Part shown: positions 13,801 through 20,802 of the stretch, piece by piece
Layout: each line of letters opens with the position of its first letter
Position numbering within the stretch: position 1 is the first letter of the stretch
Assembly (NCBI RefSeq): GCF_000150275.1
Contig: NW_002060951.1
Coordinates: forward strand, 1,994,297-2,058,296
From: Trichoplax adhaerens
Lineage: Eukaryota > Animalia > Placozoa
Direction of reading: 5' to 3'
Length of the DNA: 64,000 nucleotides
The notes under the pieces: model-generated
The model's database searches: none
What the model saw: only the letters and a program-made list of their open reading frames with translations
What the model was told of the DNA's origin: nothing
Made by a program: the position numbers and the translations under genes

Positions 13801-16800
13801 TCGTGTATAATACACACGTATACATCAAAAAAATTTTAATAGCTAATCAACAATATTTAGCCATGACTAAATCATTGTTAAGAGTAAAGCTAGGGTGAAA
13901 GACAGAGTTTCAATATTGATGTAATCTGGCGATAAATTAAATTTGCAGTATTAAACTAATAAAATGGTTATTTCATCGTGATAGTACTGTAGTTATAGGT
14001 GTAGAAATACATGACACACAATTCACTAAATTAAAATTTACCTCCGAACTAATAATAATCGGTGTTTTTAGCTTTTACTTTTTGCATTTATCTAATTGCA
14101 GTTATATTTCTCTAAGGTTATGTCACTGTATTACCTTCATTTTAGTATTAAATAAATATAAAATTTTCCATTGGTTTTATCTAACTTTTAGGCGGAACAT
14201 CTCGCGAAGGCTATCAGCCCGATCGATGGACCTATCAAGATTAAACATGTTCGATATATCCTCTTCAATTCTCCAAAAAATGAGTACAGTTCAGTACTTG
14301 ACTTCTAAAATGAGTAAATATATCATAGACGTGCGTACCATGTGATGCTCATTTATGTAGATCTATTAATTGCATGATTGAATAAGTACCCAGATATTAG
14401 GCTAAATTGTAGTTTATTTGTTATACTAATTATTAGTGGTAGTAAATTGCCTCCATCTTTCAGAGCTCATTACGACATAAGTCTTAGCTACCTTAACTTA
14501 TCGTAATTACCATCATTGGAACGTGGAAAAAGAAGGGATCTGTGAGTTTTTGGAATTCCTTAAATAAATTGCCTTTACATTCTCAAGAAATAATTTGTTG
14601 GAAGGGGTTGTGTATCATCCATAAAATATTTATTGAAGGCCATCCAAATGTAAGCATTTCGTAATTACTTTCTTTTCTATAACTTGACTATCATATAGCG
14701 TGGAATGTTTGAATGTATCCGTTTTAAAGCATAATAAAAGCCATTTCATATCACATAAATAGGTTATAATCGAATCTTATAACTATAAGAATCTTTTAAG
14801 TAGTCTTCTCTCTACGTGGGTAAGAAAATGAATATGTTTTCGCTAGCTAAAGATCGATTGTTATTTATTTGCAAGAAATCACCCTTGTGTCTTATATTTC
14901 AGACTGCTAGATCTGAATCTTATCCGAAACTGATTATCTTGTACTTGAAATACTTGGATGAAAAGTTGGAATTTCACAAAAAGGTCCAATATCTTGTATA
15001 CTACACTGTAAAGAACTTTACGATATTTATTTTCATACTGTTGATATTGCCAACCTCACTCCCAATAGTATCAAGCTATTCCATCAAATTTTACCAGCCA
15101 ATCTAGTGGATCTATTATAGACTTACCGACAAAGGATATGAACGATACGTAAGTTCTCAATTTCCTCTCCTGTACGGTATTGATATCGTATTTAGTTCAC
15201 ATATAATTTTTGCATCGGCGCTAGAAAATCGATGGTTGACAGTGATATATTCATGTTGTGTGAATGTACACTTTATCTTGTTTAATAGTTATTTTGCTAT
15301 TTAATCGCTTGTGTATGTAACCCGTAATCTTTCATTTCATTACTTAGCTACCAATTGGTAGTAGACTTACTCGATTTGCAGGATCAGCTATTACGTCTTC
15401 AATATTATGGTATTTGATAAAGTAAAATTAATGGTTATCATTTCAATTATTATTCGTAAATACCGGTGTATCATCCATGTATCCCTACGTTTCCATAGTA
15501 TATATCTTAGCAACTTTTCGAATTTTTGTACAGTTTACGAAGCTGTTGGACTAAGTGGTTCTATGAATCCATCTGGACAATGTAAAGTTTTTTGTTTTAT
15601 TACCATCATCCACGTAAGGAATAGATTGGACTAGATAAATTTGTTTCTTAAACGTAATTTTGTATTATATCAAGTTCACTAGTTACACAATGCTCATCTA
15701 GCTGTGAGCTATTCTGGACGTTCTTTTGACCTATATTTTAATTCTAGGAATCATACAACATTTATGGACTCATAGTAAAAGCAATGTTTGAATTGCATAA
15801 ATGTAAGTTTTGCTTTATATTCCATAACGTATAGCGTATATGTTGTATATAATTAATGGCCTACGACTATCGTAATTACTAGATATTTTATTTTATAAGT
15901 TTATACAAAATAAGATAGTAACCATTCCTTTCATAATTTTTGTTAGATCTTGACCCTGAATTCCTAGCAGGCCATAGAACAAGATTTTCGAAGCAATTGG
16001 CAGTGTAAGGAAATTTTATATTATCGTTAACTATATATATGAATAAAGCCACGGAAGCATTTCATAATAATACTTATTCTGAATAGATTACGGACTTTTT
16101 ACAACAACGCCCATACTTTGACATACCTAAGGACTTTAACACCAATTCCTACTCTGCCTGAGGTTTTTATTACATAATTTTGACTGATTATTTTAAATCT
16201 TACTTTGTGATAATTCTTTACAATGGCCTAATTTTTACCGTTAATCATAGAATGAAATAGAATTTGTTCAAGGGGATGTTTCTAACGTTGTAATCACGTC
16301 TTATCGTGAAAGTCGAACAGATTTTTCGCATGATTCGCTACCTTCACCAGATGCTAGCCCTTCTCCAGATCTCATCAGCGATCTTGATGCTACTGATAGA
16401 TCCAGTGCCTCGCTTTCATCACCAATCAGTCCAGCTGTAAATTATTTCGTCTCTTTGAGTTATGCAACTATACACTTTAGCGATCTCTAATTGGGTTTAA
16501 AAAACTTGTATAGGCGACTATTGAGCATTCTTTTGCTGATATCCCTGAAACTGTTGACATGCAAAATGTGTCTTCACCAAGAGTCGACGACAGGTTAGAT
16601 CATCTCAACGATCTTCGCTAACGTGACAAATAATAACTTTCTCTTTTTATCAATTACTGATAGTAAGGATGAATTGATTAATCATTTACGCCAACGAATT
16701 GAAGAGCTACAAATTGAATTAGTAAAATGCAAGTCTGAGGTATTTCTTTTATATTAATGGATTAATAAACATAGTTTTGGTTTACATACAGTTGTCTATT

Positions 16801-19800
16801 GTAGAGAAGTTACTAATTTTTGTATTCAAATCTTTCAAGTTCGAATCCGAGAAGAGCCGAATGCATGAGCAAATCCTTGAGGTAACATGGCAGAAATAAT
16901 ATGAATACTTTGCAGATTTAAATATGATTACTAAATTTAGAAATATATTTATGTAGTACGAAGAAGAAATTCAGCAATTGAAGACAACTATCAAAGCGGT
17001 AAATTTTCCTTATATGACCGTTGATGATCACAATTAATTACAAAAAATCACCAGACATACTTATCTAAGTTAATGCTAGATCATTGAAACTGCTATTTTG
17101 TTACACTCGCATGTTCATGAATTTAGATCCAACAAGAATTGGCGGAATATCGAGCAATTGCAGAAGAGTCATGTCAAGTAAGGCATTGTACTTGGAAAGG
17201 AACGTACTCCAGATTTATTCATACTTCATTGCATTATTTACCTGTTAGGAAAATGTACAACTAAAGGCACATCTTGATACCTTAGCTATAGCTTCACCTC
17301 AAGTAGCAGGAGGGGAATGGGAAGGTTAAATCGTTTATAAGTTACTTAACATGCTTTTATCATAATATTTTACGATAGCGTGTCTATTTTAATTATTTCT
17401 TAAATAATAGCTAAATTCAATAAAATGAAGCAAATGTATCTTAAAGTCAGAGACGATCATGTTAATCTTCTTAGAAAGGTAATTCGTTTAGTTGATTTAT
17501 TGGTCACTTTGATAACTTGCAAAATATATCAATTTTGGTCACTTAGTGGCAATAATATTTCTATGTGTACCTATTACCTACACTGTTTTGATGTCATCTT
17601 AAATTGTTGATTACCGCAGCACGGCAACATAGAAAGTCAGCTAAAGGCCGCACTATTGGAAAATGGGGATATATTAGTGGAATTGGAATCGAAGACTGCT
17701 GACAATGACAACCTATCACAAGAACTTAGTGCGCTAGTGGTCAAGTTAGATTTGCTTAATAAGCAACATGAACAGGAACTACGACAAAAAAATAATAAGC
17801 TGCAAGATCAAACAAAACAATTAGAAAGCGTTCATGCGGAAATGGAGGCTCTTAAAGCTAGTACAGAAACAATTACAGTTAAAGCATCGGTGAATAAGTC
17901 CTTACATGTATTAACTAAATCAGTCTGTAAACTAGTTTTAAAATAATACATGGCATCATTTTTGACAGGCTCTGACTGACGCTGTCGATGAAAGATTATT
18001 ACAAAGTAGCAATGAAGAGAACGTACCAACAAGTGATTCGGACAAAAATGAATTTCAATTTTCGATGATAGGTAGTATTTCCGACGCTAGCGATTTTGCT
18101 CTTAATAGTATTTTTTGACAAAAACTAATATTCTTCCGATAATTGATAGATTGGTCACTGCAACAAGCAATTGCAATGATTTCATTATCATTAGATGGAA
18201 AAAATCCCTCAGCACTTCCTGTTGATGAATCTCTAGGTAATTATCATAAAATTTAACCTTGTGAACTTTCCGCAACAATTGGTAAGATCAGCAAATTCTT
18301 ACCTACTTTTGTTATTGTATACTATTTCAATCGGTCAGATTCCATGCTGTTTCTAGCGGAAAATTCTTCACAGAGAGCAACTATGCTTACTGTTGACTTG
18401 CGTGAATATTTTAAAAATAACTCTGGTAAGGATTATTAGGCTTTCTTTATTATGGGAGTTGTTTGCATACCTAAAGTAATTGATGTTAGGATTTTAGTTT
18501 GTTTATTATCTATTAAATTTGCCCACTATTCAAATCATAAAATCAAATAGATATTGAATCGATAGATACCTCTTTGCGCCACTTTACTTCTGTATTCGCC
18601 TTGATGATTTATACAAGTAAAATATCCTTCCATGGGGACGAAAATCAAAAAACTAATGGTAATATTCACAGATAAAATCTTTGTTAAGTTTGGTACAAAA
18701 CGTGAATAAATTTGCTTTCGTTAGTCTTTTCAGAAATCATTGAAAAGTGCGAGAATGCTGGATACAGTGTTCGAAAGTTTTTAGAAGACCTAAGAAGTAC
18801 AATCAAAGATGGTAATACGTTATAAAATCTTTAAAAAAATAGATAAATTTTTTATCTTATATCGAGTTACTTCGAGACCATAACAGTAATCGTAACATTA
18901 TTTCTCTCTAGATCCATCCATGCTAGAAGCGGTATCTGAAGATATAAAACATACCCTAGACGCCATAATAGATTTAGTAAAGGTGACAAAGCTTTTAAGA
19001 ATATTTTCTCCTAATTTTTAGATACGTAATTTTAAGTTATTTAATTTAGAAACAATGCGAATCTGCGAACGCCGTTGAAAAAGGTGATATTGTTGGAGAA
19101 GAAATGGCGTATACAACGGAGGTAAAAATTTTAGCTACAGCCTTTGGTATGTATTGCTGCGAAAATCAAATAACCGAATATAGTTGTAGGATTACATGCT
19201 TTATCTCATACTTATCCTTTTCCTATAAGGCAATTGATGTTGCAACGGCCAAAATTGAGGCTTTACTAAGACGCGCACGTGAGAATGAAACTGGGACTAA
19301 ACTAGAAGTGAATGAGAGGTAATGCTGTGCTTTGTAATAAATCTTGATTAAATTAATGAAATATGTTTTTATGTAAAACGTTTCGTGTCATTATTTGTTT
19401 CATAAACAGGATTTTAGATTCCTCAACGAAACTAATGAATGTAATCTTTAAAAAATTTCTTTAAATTTTCTTATTGCAGTTTACTAAATCCTATATAACG
19501 CATATGATACGATTTTAATAAAATTGTTACAGGCGATAAGATTACTTATTATTCGGGCTTCTATTCTGCAAAAAGAAATAGTAAGGATAAAGAAGGTAAT
19601 GCCAACTTTTAGTTGTACTGGAATTTCGGGATCTTAACAAACGAATACTATTTTTACTTGTAGGGAATCAGCAGTGGTAAAAAAGATTTTTATAAGCGTA
19701 ATAATCGGTGGACTGAAGGACTATTATCAGCGGCAAAGGCTGTTGGAGCAAGTGCTTCAAATTTTGTGTATGTCTTTGGATAATTCTATAGTTTAAAGAT

Positions 19801-20802
19801 AGGAAATTGCTCAATCTGTTAACTTCGTTTATTACACATATCCCATACATTACGGTTGTGCATGCCATTTTAGAGAGGTAGCCAATGAAATGATGGAAGG
19901 TACTTGTGGATTAGAGGAACTTGTTGTAGCTTCGCGTGAAATAAGCAGCAGTACTGTGCAGCTGGTAAGTAAAATAGTTAATAGTGGAAAACGTACAGTA
20001 TTGTGAAAGTAGACATTGCTAGCTACTAACTTTCGTATTATATAGGTTACGGCTTCCAGAGTTAAATCGAATCCTAGAAGTGAGAATTTGCTGCAATTAG
20101 AAAGTGCATCTAAACTAGGTTATATTAATTTGCTACTTTTACCAAATAATAGAACATGTGATACTATATCATGCCTTTAAAATTTCACAATATAGTCACT
20201 GCGTCAACTACCGAGGTTATAGCAGCAGCCAATGCTGGAAGAAAAGTTTTAGCTGAAGGTATATCTCCTTTTGTTATTAATTTGTAATTCGGAAGCTATC
20301 TATTCTATACTAAATCATGCTTGATCTGTATTTAAATGCAGACGATCAAAACTATGATTTTTCGAAGATATCATTAACCCAAGCCAAACGATTGGAGATG
20401 GAATCACAGGTATTAGCGCCTGAAAACATTTCAGGAGTGAATCTAAGTAGCGAGTCTTTTGGTAACAATAATTTATGTAAGAAAAACAACTTAAAAGTAA
20501 TAATGTGAATGTAGGTGCGTTTACTTCGTTTGGAATCTAATGTAACCAAAGAAAGAGGTTATCTAGGAAGAATCAGAAAGCATCATTACCATTTGGCCGG
20601 TGCGAGCGAAGGCTGGGAAGTAGTAAGTCTAAGCTGGTTATATACGTTCAAGCTGAATACATTTGCATCTGCTGTGCTATTTAGCTAACATGGTATTCAT
20701 ATTGGGAATTAGGATGAAGCGGAGGAAGCTAACGAAGCTTCAGAGAACCCAGACGAAGGAGACAAAGAGATAATTAATAAAGAAACGGATAATCCTGAAT
20801 GA
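10827..20802 (+). CDS. HIP1: Huntingtin-interacting protein 1 / HIP1R / Sla2 family (ANTH, coiled coil, I/LWEQ talin-like domain); about 37 exons, about 1036 aa
   Basis: Exon 1 (10827-10904) MSSLTRRLSESLGIGYDSAERFDREH. Exon 2 (14192-14255) AEHLAKAISPIDGPIKIKHVR. Exon 3 (14507-14649) IIGTWKKKGSVSFWNSLNKLPLHSQEIICWKGLCIIHKIFIEGHPN (ANTH). Later motifs: LAGHRTRF; HVNLLRK; LEVNERILD; FYKRNNRWTEGLLSAAKAVG; SREISSSTVQLVTASRVKS; DFSKISLTQAKRLEMESQVRLLRLE; RKHHYHLAG (I/LWEQ). Last exon 20713-20802 ends in TGA. My summed exon lengths (3111 nt) are in frame. Co-orthologue of HIP1 and HIP1R. Confidence 0.93.
14256..14506 (+). other. U12-type (minor spliceosome) intron 2 of HIP1, apparent AT-AA termini
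   Basis: 5' end ATATCCTCTT directly after CGA T; branch site CCTTAAC at 14491-14497. No in-frame GT-AG pair found. The frame is restored only by ending at ...TCGTAA| (14506). Confidence 0.8.

What the first reader, a model, noticed from the sequence alone, without database searches (positions are those of the whole stretch)
14256..14506. Minor-spliceosome intron with non-canonical AT-AA ends in HIP1, with an out-of-frame AC 4 nt downstream
Seen: exon 2 ends ...KHVR+T followed by ATATCCTCTT (U12 5' splice site), and a U12 branch site CCTTAAC lies at 14491-14497. The nearest AC (14509-14510) shifts the frame to a stop (…CTG TGA). Splicing at AA (14505-14506) gives HVR-F-T-IIGT, exactly colinear with HAR-T-C-ILGT of human HIP1, and keeps the whole CDS in frame. 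Established: U12 3' sites are chosen mainly by distance from the branch point, and AT-AA introns are rare. Inference: this early-branching animal has a working minor spliceosome, and AA/AC competition could route some HIP1 mRNA to NMD.
Basis: partly seen in the sequence, partly recalled or inferred. Interest (0 to 1): 0.8.

Follow-up and report, generated by a model that had tools for sequence, protein, structure and literature searches.

The report
AT-AA minor intron in HIP1
The second intron of this placozoan-like animal's HIP1 gene is a real minor-spliceosome (U12-type) intron that must end in AA rather than the usual AC to keep the protein in frame. This is a rare but already known intron subtype, at an ancient conserved position, and ordinary gene predictors would miss it.

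Summary
Exon 2 (14192-14255) is followed by ATATCCTCT, TACCTTAAC lies at 14489-14497, AA at 14505-06 and AC at 14509-10. Using the AC gives a TGA at 14543-45.

The AT-AA reading is strongly supported by comparison, not by transcripts:
- All 131 orthologues carrying the motif have exactly 2 residues between KHxR and IIGT.
- Exon 2 is 64 nt in all five animal loci fetched. Exon 3 is 143 nt in three and 143 or 146 in two. The window matches 64 and 143 only with the AA acceptor.
- The same phase-1 intron is U12-type in Hydractinia, Rhopilema, Lingula and Xenopus HIP1R (GT-AG) and in Ptychodera (AT-AC). It is U2-type in Capsaspora.
- The genome encodes U11, U12, U4atac, U6atac, a U11-48K-type zinc finger and a CENATAC match.

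None of this is new in kind. AT-AA is the commonest non-canonical minor subtype (about 1.1% of conserved animal minor introns). Mouse Hip1r has a known minor intron. Trichoplax minor snRNAs were published in 2008-09. The scan has also flagged AT-AA introns elsewhere in this genome (SHMT and others).

AA/AC competition feeding NMD is plausible (spacing 10 versus 14 nt around a 11-13 optimum) but untested. The AC is simply a conserved Thr codon. I rate it a new member of a known kind, of modest interest.

The parts
14186..14191 (+). Canonical U2-type acceptor (ttttag) of the intron upstream of exon 2, phase 0
   Evidence: The acceptor is in the same place in five animal orthologues.
14192..14255 (+). 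HIP1 exon 2, 64 nt (21 codons plus 1 nt). It encodes AEHLAKAISPIDGPIKIKHVR, including the KAIx6xKxKH lipid-binding signature of ANTH domains.
   Evidence: The 64-nt length is identical in Rhopilema, Hydractinia, Lingula, Xenopus HIP1R and Ptychodera. The signature is named from my own knowledge.
14256..14506 (+). U12-type intron, 251 nt, phase 1, termini AT-AA
   Evidence: The orthologous intron is U12-type in five animals.
14256..14264 (+). U12 5' splice site ATATCCTCT (8 of 9 to RTATCCTTT)
14489..14497 (+). U12 branch site TACCTTAAC (8 of 9 to TTCCTTRAY). The branch A is 14495 or 14496.
   Evidence: The genome's U12 snRNA carries the matching GAGTAAGGAAAAT.
14505..14506 (+). Productive 3' terminal dinucleotide AA, 10 nt after branch A 14496
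   Evidence: It is the only acceptor that gives a 143-nt exon 3 and two residues between KHVR and IIGT.
14509..14510 (+). Out-of-frame AC, 14 nt after the branch A. It is the first two bases of the ACC Thr codon.
   Evidence: Thr at this position is shared with cnidarian orthologues.
14543..14545 (+). TGA reached if the AC acceptor is used
14507..14649 (+). HIP1 exon 3, 143 nt, ANTH domain, followed by GTAAGC
   Evidence: Pfam ANTH 32.6 bits. Exon 3 is 143 nt in Rhopilema, Lingula and Ptychodera.
14496..14497 (+). In-frame AC inside the branch motif. It is the acceptor of the rejected rival reading, which adds 3 residues.
   Evidence: That reading would make exon 3 152 nt long.
19670..20616 (+). 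C-terminal I/LWEQ (THATCH) exons of the same gene, colinear with Pfam profile positions 1-151

Best explanation
Intron 2 of the single HIP1/HIP1R-family gene of this genome is removed by the minor (U12-dependent) spliceosome. The genome's size and assembly fit Trichoplax adhaerens.

Inferred mechanism, from the established pathway:
- U11 and then U6atac recognise ATATCCTCT at 14256.
- U12 pairs with TACCTTAAC at 14489-97.
- The 3' site is picked by distance from the branch A.

The productive cut is after AA (14505-06), 10-11 nt from the branch A. It joins exon 2 to exon 3 as ...KHVR-F-T-IIGT.... This makes it an A-type (AT-AN) minor intron of the AT-AA subtype.

It is the orthologue of an ancient minor intron of the HIP1 family. 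That intron is GT-AG in cnidarians, a brachiopod and frog HIP1R, AT-AC in a hemichordate, and U2-type in Capsaspora. The subtype has therefore switched in evolution while position and phase stayed fixed.

Shown here: the signals, the colinearity, the orthology and the presence of the machinery. Inferred: actual use of AA in vivo and U12 dependence.
For: - Sequence signals are as described.
- All 131 orthologues carrying the motif have exactly two residues between KHxR and [ILVM][ILVM]G[TS].
- Exon 2 is 64 nt in all five animal loci. Exon 3 is 143 nt in three and 143 or 146 in two. The window reproduces 64 and 143 only with the AA acceptor.
- Among in-frame acceptors between the TAA at 14494-96 and IIGT, only 14496-97 (AC, inside the branch motif) and 14505-06 (AA) have a penultimate A.
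- The orthologous intron has U12 signals in Ptychodera (AT-AC, 9/9 and 9/9), Hydractinia, Rhopilema, Lingula and Xenopus HIP1R.
- Mouse Hip1r has a minor intron whose in-vitro splicing drops 4-fold on U12 block (PMC8848931).
- The genome encodes U12 (97 bits), U6atac (105), U11 (99) and U4atac (59), a U11-48K-type zinc finger and a CENATAC/CCDC84 match.
- AT-AA is a documented subtype (PMC1635337, PMC8280824, PMC10639083).
- A second AT-AA candidate (SHMT) and a canonical AT-AC intron (VPS11, spacing 12) exist in the same genome.
Against: - No transcript, EST or junction read was available. Records of this genome and its near relatives are withheld from the protein and contig tools.
- The AC at spacing 14 has the more active terminal base and lies within the permitted spacing, so it may take a sizeable share of splicing.
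- The 5' splice site has C at +8 and the branch motif has A at position 2, one mismatch each.
- The genome's U6atac lacks the canonical AAGGA box, although this 'CC variant' is known in species that keep minor introns (PMC2396436).
Confidence: 0.85

Rival explanations
1. The minor spliceosome mainly uses the canonical AC at 14509-10. Most or all HIP1 mRNA is then frameshifted, and the gene is a decaying pseudogene or is expressed only at trace level.
For: AC is the canonical A-type terminus. It lies 14 nt from the branch A, inside the usable range. The optimum is 11-13 nt (PMC3584512).
Against: The rest of the gene is intact and colinear with orthologues. Its ANTH exon and five I/LWEQ exons cover Pfam profile positions 1-151. 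It is the only HIP1-family gene found in the genome. The AA acceptor restores exact exon-length conservation.
Confidence: 0.04
2. An assembly indel near 14498-14511 hides a normal in-frame AT-AC intron.
For: This cannot be excluded without reads. A single-base error would change the frame.
Against: One inserted base after the AC would give in-frame AC splicing but with only one residue between KHVR and IIGT and a 140-nt exon 3. Orthologues show 2 residues in 131 of 131 and a 143-nt exon. Restoring both would need a 4-nt error. The sequence as assembled already fits exactly with AA. A second AT-AA candidate exists elsewhere in the genome.
Confidence: 0.03
3. The intron ends at the in-frame AC at 14496-97, using a weaker upstream branch site (GTCTTAGC, 14480-87, A at 14485, spacing 12). 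This would be a canonical AT-AC intron and a protein with three extra residues (FIVIT instead of FT).
For: The AC is in frame and the spacing of 12 nt is ideal. Lingula uses a TTCCTTAGC-type branch site.
Against: It requires the near-perfect TACCTTAAC, 10 nt upstream of the conserved exon start, to be a coincidence (about 3e-4 densities). It breaks the 143-nt exon and the invariant 2-residue spacing. U12 would pair much better with CCTTAAC.
Confidence: 0.04
4. AA and AC are both used, and the balance is an evolved switch that sends part of the HIP1 mRNA to nonsense-mediated decay to set its dosage.
For: The two sites straddle the 11-13 nt optimum at 10 and 14 nt (PMC3584512). Selection of the U12 3' site is described as error-prone (PMC3584512). 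The TGA at 14543-45 lies upstream of many exon junctions. A Upf2 domain is encoded in the genome.
Against: There are no expression data. The AC is the start of a Thr codon (ACC) that cnidarian orthologues share at the same residue. It therefore needs no regulatory explanation.
Confidence: 0.08

Closest known systems
A-type (AT-AN) U12 introns, AT-AA subtype
   Same: It has an ATATCC donor, a TCCTTAAC-type branch site, a short branch-to-3' spacing, a penultimate A and a variable last base. AT-AA is the commonest non-canonical minor subtype: 1.117% of conserved animal minor introns, 823 cases (PMC10639083 supplement). It is also described in U12DB (PMC1635337) and the CENATAC study (PMC8280824).
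   Different: Here an out-of-frame AC sits 4 nt further on. No transcript evidence is available yet. The host is a placozoan-like genome.
The minor intron of vertebrate HIP1R (mouse Hip1r reporter; Xenopus laevis HIP1R locus)
   Same: The Xenopus intron is at the same position and phase, after KHxR plus 1 nt. The flanking exon 2 is 64 nt and exon 3 is 143 or 146 nt. Mouse Hip1r splicing is U12-dependent in vitro (PMC8848931).
   Different: The vertebrate intron is the GT-AG subtype and about 2 kb long. The window's intron is AT-AA and 251 nt. I did not confirm that the mouse reporter intron is this same intron.
Orthologous AT-AC intron of Ptychodera flava HIP1
   Same: It is also A-type, with an ATATCCTTT donor, a TTCCTTGAC branch site and spacing of 11 nt, at the same position and phase.
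   Different: It ends in the canonical AC and has no competing site nearby.
Alternative or erroneous 3' splice-site use in U12 introns
   Same: Two candidate AN dinucleotides lie within the 10-20 nt window after one branch site. The literature says the 3' site is chosen by distance and is error-prone (PMC3584512).
   Different: Use of the second site is not shown here.
Trichoplax minor spliceosome (snRNA annotation of 2008-09)
   Same: U11, U12 and U4atac are each found once and U6atac has a single full-length copy. U6atac carries the published 'CC variant' GCCGA box (PMC2396436, PMC2655684).
   Different: Those papers list the RNAs, not this intron.

Membership tests
U12-type (minor) intron | 5' splice site matching RTATCCTTT directly at the exon end | tested here: met
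   ATATCCTCT at 14256-64, 8 of 9
U12-type (minor) intron | Branch site matching TTCCTTRAY | tested here: met
   TACCTTAAC at 14489-97, 8 of 9. It is complementary to GUAAGGA in the genome's U12.
U12-type (minor) intron | Short branch-to-3' splice site spacing (about 10-15 nt, optimum 11-13) and no polypyrimidine tract or AG | tested here: met
   Spacing is 10 nt to AA (11 if A 14495 is the branch point). There is no AG from 14488 up to the IIGT codons and no uninterrupted pyrimidine run (PMC3584512).
U12-type (minor) intron | Orthologous introns at the same position are U12-type | tested here: met
   Ptychodera, Hydractinia, Rhopilema, Lingula and Xenopus HIP1R are U12-type. Capsaspora is U2-type.
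U12-type (minor) intron | The genome encodes minor-spliceosome components | tested here: met
   U11, U12, U4atac and U6atac are above Rfam cut-offs. There are also matches to the U11-48K zinc finger and to CCDC84/CENATAC.
U12-type (minor) intron | Splicing depends on U12/U6atac snRNPs | not testable with these tools
   This needs snRNA blocking or a minigene assay.
AT-AA subtype | The intron begins AT and ends AA, as defined by the mature mRNA | tested here: inconclusive
   Inferred from protein colinearity (131 of 131) and conserved exon lengths of 64 and 143 nt. No transcript could be reached.
HIP1/HIP1R/Sla2 family | N-terminal ANTH domain | tested here: met
   Exon 3 hits PF07651 at 32.6 bits against a cut-off of 21.5.
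HIP1/HIP1R/Sla2 family | C-terminal I/LWEQ (THATCH) domain | tested here: met
   Five exons hit PF01608 colinearly over positions 1-151. Two of them are above the cut-off on their own.
NMD-coupled alternative splicing | An alternative junction creates a premature stop upstream of later exon junctions, and the isoform is observed and stabilised when NMD is blocked | tested here: inconclusive
   The stop at 14543-45 and downstream introns are present, and a Upf2 domain is in the genome. The isoform itself could not be observed.

The most novel reading that the evidence does not exclude
The in-frame AA and the out-of-frame AC straddle the optimal branch-to-3' spacing (10 versus 14 nt). They could form a conserved placozoan switch in which minor-spliceosome 3' site choice sends a set fraction of HIP1 mRNA to NMD, making HIP1 dosage depend on minor-spliceosome activity.
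Probability: 0.07. Interest if true: 0.5.

Novelty: new member of a known kind. Interest (0 to 1): 0.28.

Why it matters
- It corrects the gene model. Any GT-AG-only predictor will truncate or misjoin HIP1 here. Orthologue models in the databases show exactly such errors: an intron translated through in P0142, and a 'LOW QUALITY PROTEIN' label in Ptychodera.
- It documents that one ancient intron kept its position and phase from before animals, while changing between U2-type, U12 GT-AG, U12 AT-AC and U12 AT-AA.
- It offers a natural test case of how the minor spliceosome chooses between a weaker in-frame AA and a stronger out-of-frame AC at nearly equal distance from the optimum.
- It does not change what is known about minor splicing.

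Tried and rejected
- **Placozoan proteins or transcripts to read the junction directly.** The exhaustive search with exon 3 and two word searches returned only other phyla. The tools state that records of this genome and of very near ones may be left out.
- **Joined exon search.** I did not search with a joined exon 2-exon 3 sequence or a junction pattern.
- **False positive.** P0001, the top hit, is an unrelated repeat protein.
- **Orthologue loci that failed.** The Hydra locus is too long to fetch. P0182, P0185, P0246 and P0009 are not on record. P0042 is a cDNA contig without introns.
- **Second donor-like motif.** ATATCCTT at 18622 in the same gene lies inside a coding exon and has no branch site, so it is chance.
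- **Paralogue or retrocopy that would show the spliced junction.** The other ANTH-model hits are a CALM/AP180-like gene (L016) and an epsin-like ORF (L018).
- **Other motif pairs in the window.** The other U12-like donor plus branch pairs that I checked have no convincing coding flanks.
- **Exon 1.** It was not located. 'Exon 2' is numbered by analogy with orthologues.
- **Literature.** The 2005 mutational paper on U12 terminal dinucleotides is not held. One paper search failed on syntax.
- **Genome-wide ratio of AT-AC to AT-AA.** I did not attempt it. Pattern matches would be dominated by chance hits without gene models.

Full report
**Setting.** The window is G000:C1406:1994297-2058296 of a 105.6-Mb genome in 1414 contigs with about 31% G+C. 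From my own knowledge, this size and contig count fit the Trichoplax adhaerens draft assembly. I did not prove the species, because records of this genome and its near relatives are withheld from the protein and contig tools.

**The gene.** A gene with an ANTH exon and five colinear I/LWEQ exons runs on the plus strand from about 14192 to about 20640.
- The ANTH exon hits PF07651 at 32.6 bits.
- The I/LWEQ exons cover PF01608 positions 1-151.
- tblastn with cnidarian and Capsaspora HIP1 proteins lines up along its length.
- The ANTH model found only two other places in the genome, a CALM/AP180-like gene and an epsin-like ORF. This appears to be the single HIP1/HIP1R-family gene.

**The observation.**
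- Exon 2 is 14192-14255, preceded by ttttag, and ends ...KIKHVR plus one T.
- The next bases are ATATCCTCTT.
- CCTTAAC is at 14491-97 (TACCTTAAC with its flank).
- AA is at 14505-06 and AC at 14509-10.
- From 14507 the frame reads F-TIIGTWKKKG...EGHPN, then GTAAGC at 14650.
- From 14511 it reads SLERGKRRDL and stops at TGA 14543-45.
- The exon 3 frame is closed upstream by TAA at 14494-96, and no AG occurs between there and the IIGT codons. No canonical acceptor is therefore possible.

With a phase-1 donor, the in-frame exon starts are 14498, 14501, 14504, 14507 and 14510. The corresponding intron ends are AC, TA, CG, AA and TA. Only the first and the fourth have an A in the penultimate position.

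**Chance.** Taken singly, the motifs are at background frequency in the window: RTATCCTY 12 against 9.3 expected, CCTTAAC 5 against 5.7 expected. From those densities, consider a donor motif exactly at the conserved exon end together with a branch motif whose A is 9-15 nt before the conserved exon start. This has a joint chance of about 2e-8. A second ATATCCTT in the same gene (18622) lies inside a coding exon and illustrates the background.

**Which acceptor.** Three independent comparisons single out AA.
1. In 131 of 131 HIP1-family proteins that carry the motif, exactly two residues separate KHxR from [ILVM][ILVM]G[TS]. AA gives F-T. The upstream AC would give five residues. An AC rescued by an indel would give one.
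2. Exon 2 is 21 codons plus 1 nt (64 nt) in Rhopilema, Hydractinia, Lingula, Xenopus HIP1R and Ptychodera, as in the window.
3. Exon 3 is 143 nt in Rhopilema, Lingula and Ptychodera. In Hydractinia and Xenopus it is 143 or 146 nt, because the intron's GT reads as the next Val codon. The window gives 143 nt only from 14507.

**Type of intron.** The orthologous intron sits at the same position and phase in every fetched locus.

| Species | Termini | 5' splice site | Branch site | Spacing (nt) |
|---|---|---|---|---|
| Ptychodera | AT-AC | ATATCCTTT | TTCCTTGAC | 11 |
| Hydractinia | GT-AG | GTATCTTTT | TTCCTTAAT | 12 |
| Rhopilema | GT-AG | GTATCTTTT | TTGCTTGAC | 10 |
| Lingula | GT-AG | GTATCCTTT | TTCCTTAGC | 9 |
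| Xenopus HIP1R | GT-AG | GTATCCTTT | TTTCTTAAC | 12 |
| Capsaspora | GT-AG | GTAAGT, with a pyrimidine tract | none (U2-type) | - |

- The position therefore predates animals.
- The intron is U12-type across animals, and its subtype has switched.
- Subtype switches are known but considered rare (PMC3584512).
- Mouse Hip1r is a known minor-intron gene whose reporter splicing falls 4-fold when U12 is blocked (PMC8848931). I did not confirm that the reporter intron is this one, but the frog HIP1R locus makes that likely.

**Machinery.**
- The genome has U12 (97.3 bits), U6atac (104.8), U11 (99.2) and U4atac (58.7).
- U12 carries GAGTAAGGAAAAT, the branch-pairing box.
- U6atac has GCCGA where most species have AAGGA. 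This is the 'CC variant' already reported for Trichoplax, cnidarians and others (PMC2396436).
- A U11-48K-type zinc finger, a five-exon match to CCDC84/CENATAC and a Upf2 domain are also encoded. CENATAC is the factor that favours AT-AN introns (PMC8280824).
- The minor snRNAs of Trichoplax, with U4atac expression verified, were published in 2009 (PMC2655684).

**Comparison with what is known.**
- AT-AA, AT-AG and AT-AT ends have been described since 2001 (PMC1635337).
- In the largest survey, AT-AA is the most common non-canonical minor subtype in animals and plants. It makes up 1.117% (823) of conserved animal minor introns, against 21.8% AT-AC (PMC10639083).
- Within this genome the scan has already flagged AT-AA introns in SHMT, NHE paralogues and spermine synthase.
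- I rechecked the SHMT signals: ATATCCTT, TTCCTTGAC, and a 112-nt intron ending in AA at spacing 13 with no AC nearby.
- I also rechecked a canonical AT-AC intron in VPS11: ATATCCTTT, CTCCTTAAC, spacing 12, 318 nt.

The HIP1 intron is thus a new member of a known kind.

**AA versus AC.**
- The optimum branch-to-3' spacing is 11-13 nt, and U12 3' site choice is described as error-prone (PMC3584512).
- From memory of the 2001 Padgett-laboratory study (not held here), the penultimate A is essential, and any last base works with C best. Spacings under 10 or over 20 nt activate other sites.
- Here AA is at 10 (or 11) and AC at 14 (or 15), so some use of AC is quite possible.
- That mRNA would stop at 14543-45, far upstream of later exon junctions, making it a plausible NMD substrate.
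- However, the AC is the first two bases of the ACC Thr codon, and Thr at this residue is shared with cnidarians. Its presence needs no regulatory reason.
- Without junction reads, this part remains an inference.

No contig was taken for human, and I fetched no human locus. The vertebrate comparison used Xenopus.

**Verdict.** The core interpretation is well supported by comparative evidence, and the regulatory add-on is untested. It is a new member of a known kind, of modest interest.

Noticed in passing
L002 (G000:C1402:437964-441092), U6atac at C1402:439464-439592 minus strand: Downstream of the one full-length U6atac gene lie five 5'-truncated U6atac-like copies within about 1 kb (C1402:438491-439325, model positions 29-126 or shorter). 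The 2009 annotation reports each snRNA except U6 as a single gene.
   Followed up: no
L002, first 25 nt of U6atac: U6atac reads GAGCCGAGAGAAGG where the Rfam consensus has GAAAGGAGAGAAGG, so the AAGGA box thought to pair with the 5' splice site is replaced by GCCGA. This is the published 'CC variant' (PMC2396436). How it pairs with ATATCCT donors remains unexplained.
   Followed up: partly
L014 (Capsaspora locus) 601-1399: The filasterean orthologue has a U2-type GT-AG intron (GTAAGT donor, long pyrimidine tract) at exactly the same position and phase as the animal U12 intron. This is either a U12-to-U2 conversion or the ancestral state.
   Followed up: partly
Protein P0142; protein P0166 / locus L015: Database gene models mishandle this intron. 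P0142 translates straight through a GTATCCTTT intron (KHVR-SILFF...), and the Ptychodera model with the AT-AC intron is labelled LOW QUALITY PROTEIN.
   Followed up: no
window 52932-52677, minus strand: ATATCCTTT is followed 238 nt later by TTCTTAAT and an AC at spacing 11. This is a formally good AT-AC minor-intron signal, but I saw no clear coding flanks.
   Followed up: partly
The flanks show no open frame, so it is probably chance.
   Followed up: partly
L018 (G000:C1384:37055-40402), minus strand: An uninterrupted 635-codon epsin-like frame (ENTH domain, DPW repeats) lies on a small contig. A frame of this length without introns is notable if most genes here have many introns, as HIP1 does.
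   Followed up: no
G000:C1413:9134950-9135061 (in L021): The SHMT gene has a 112-nt intron with ATATCCTT, TTCCTTGAC and an AA end at spacing 13, with no AC alternative. This is a second AT-AA candidate in the genome, already reported by the scan.
   Followed up: partly
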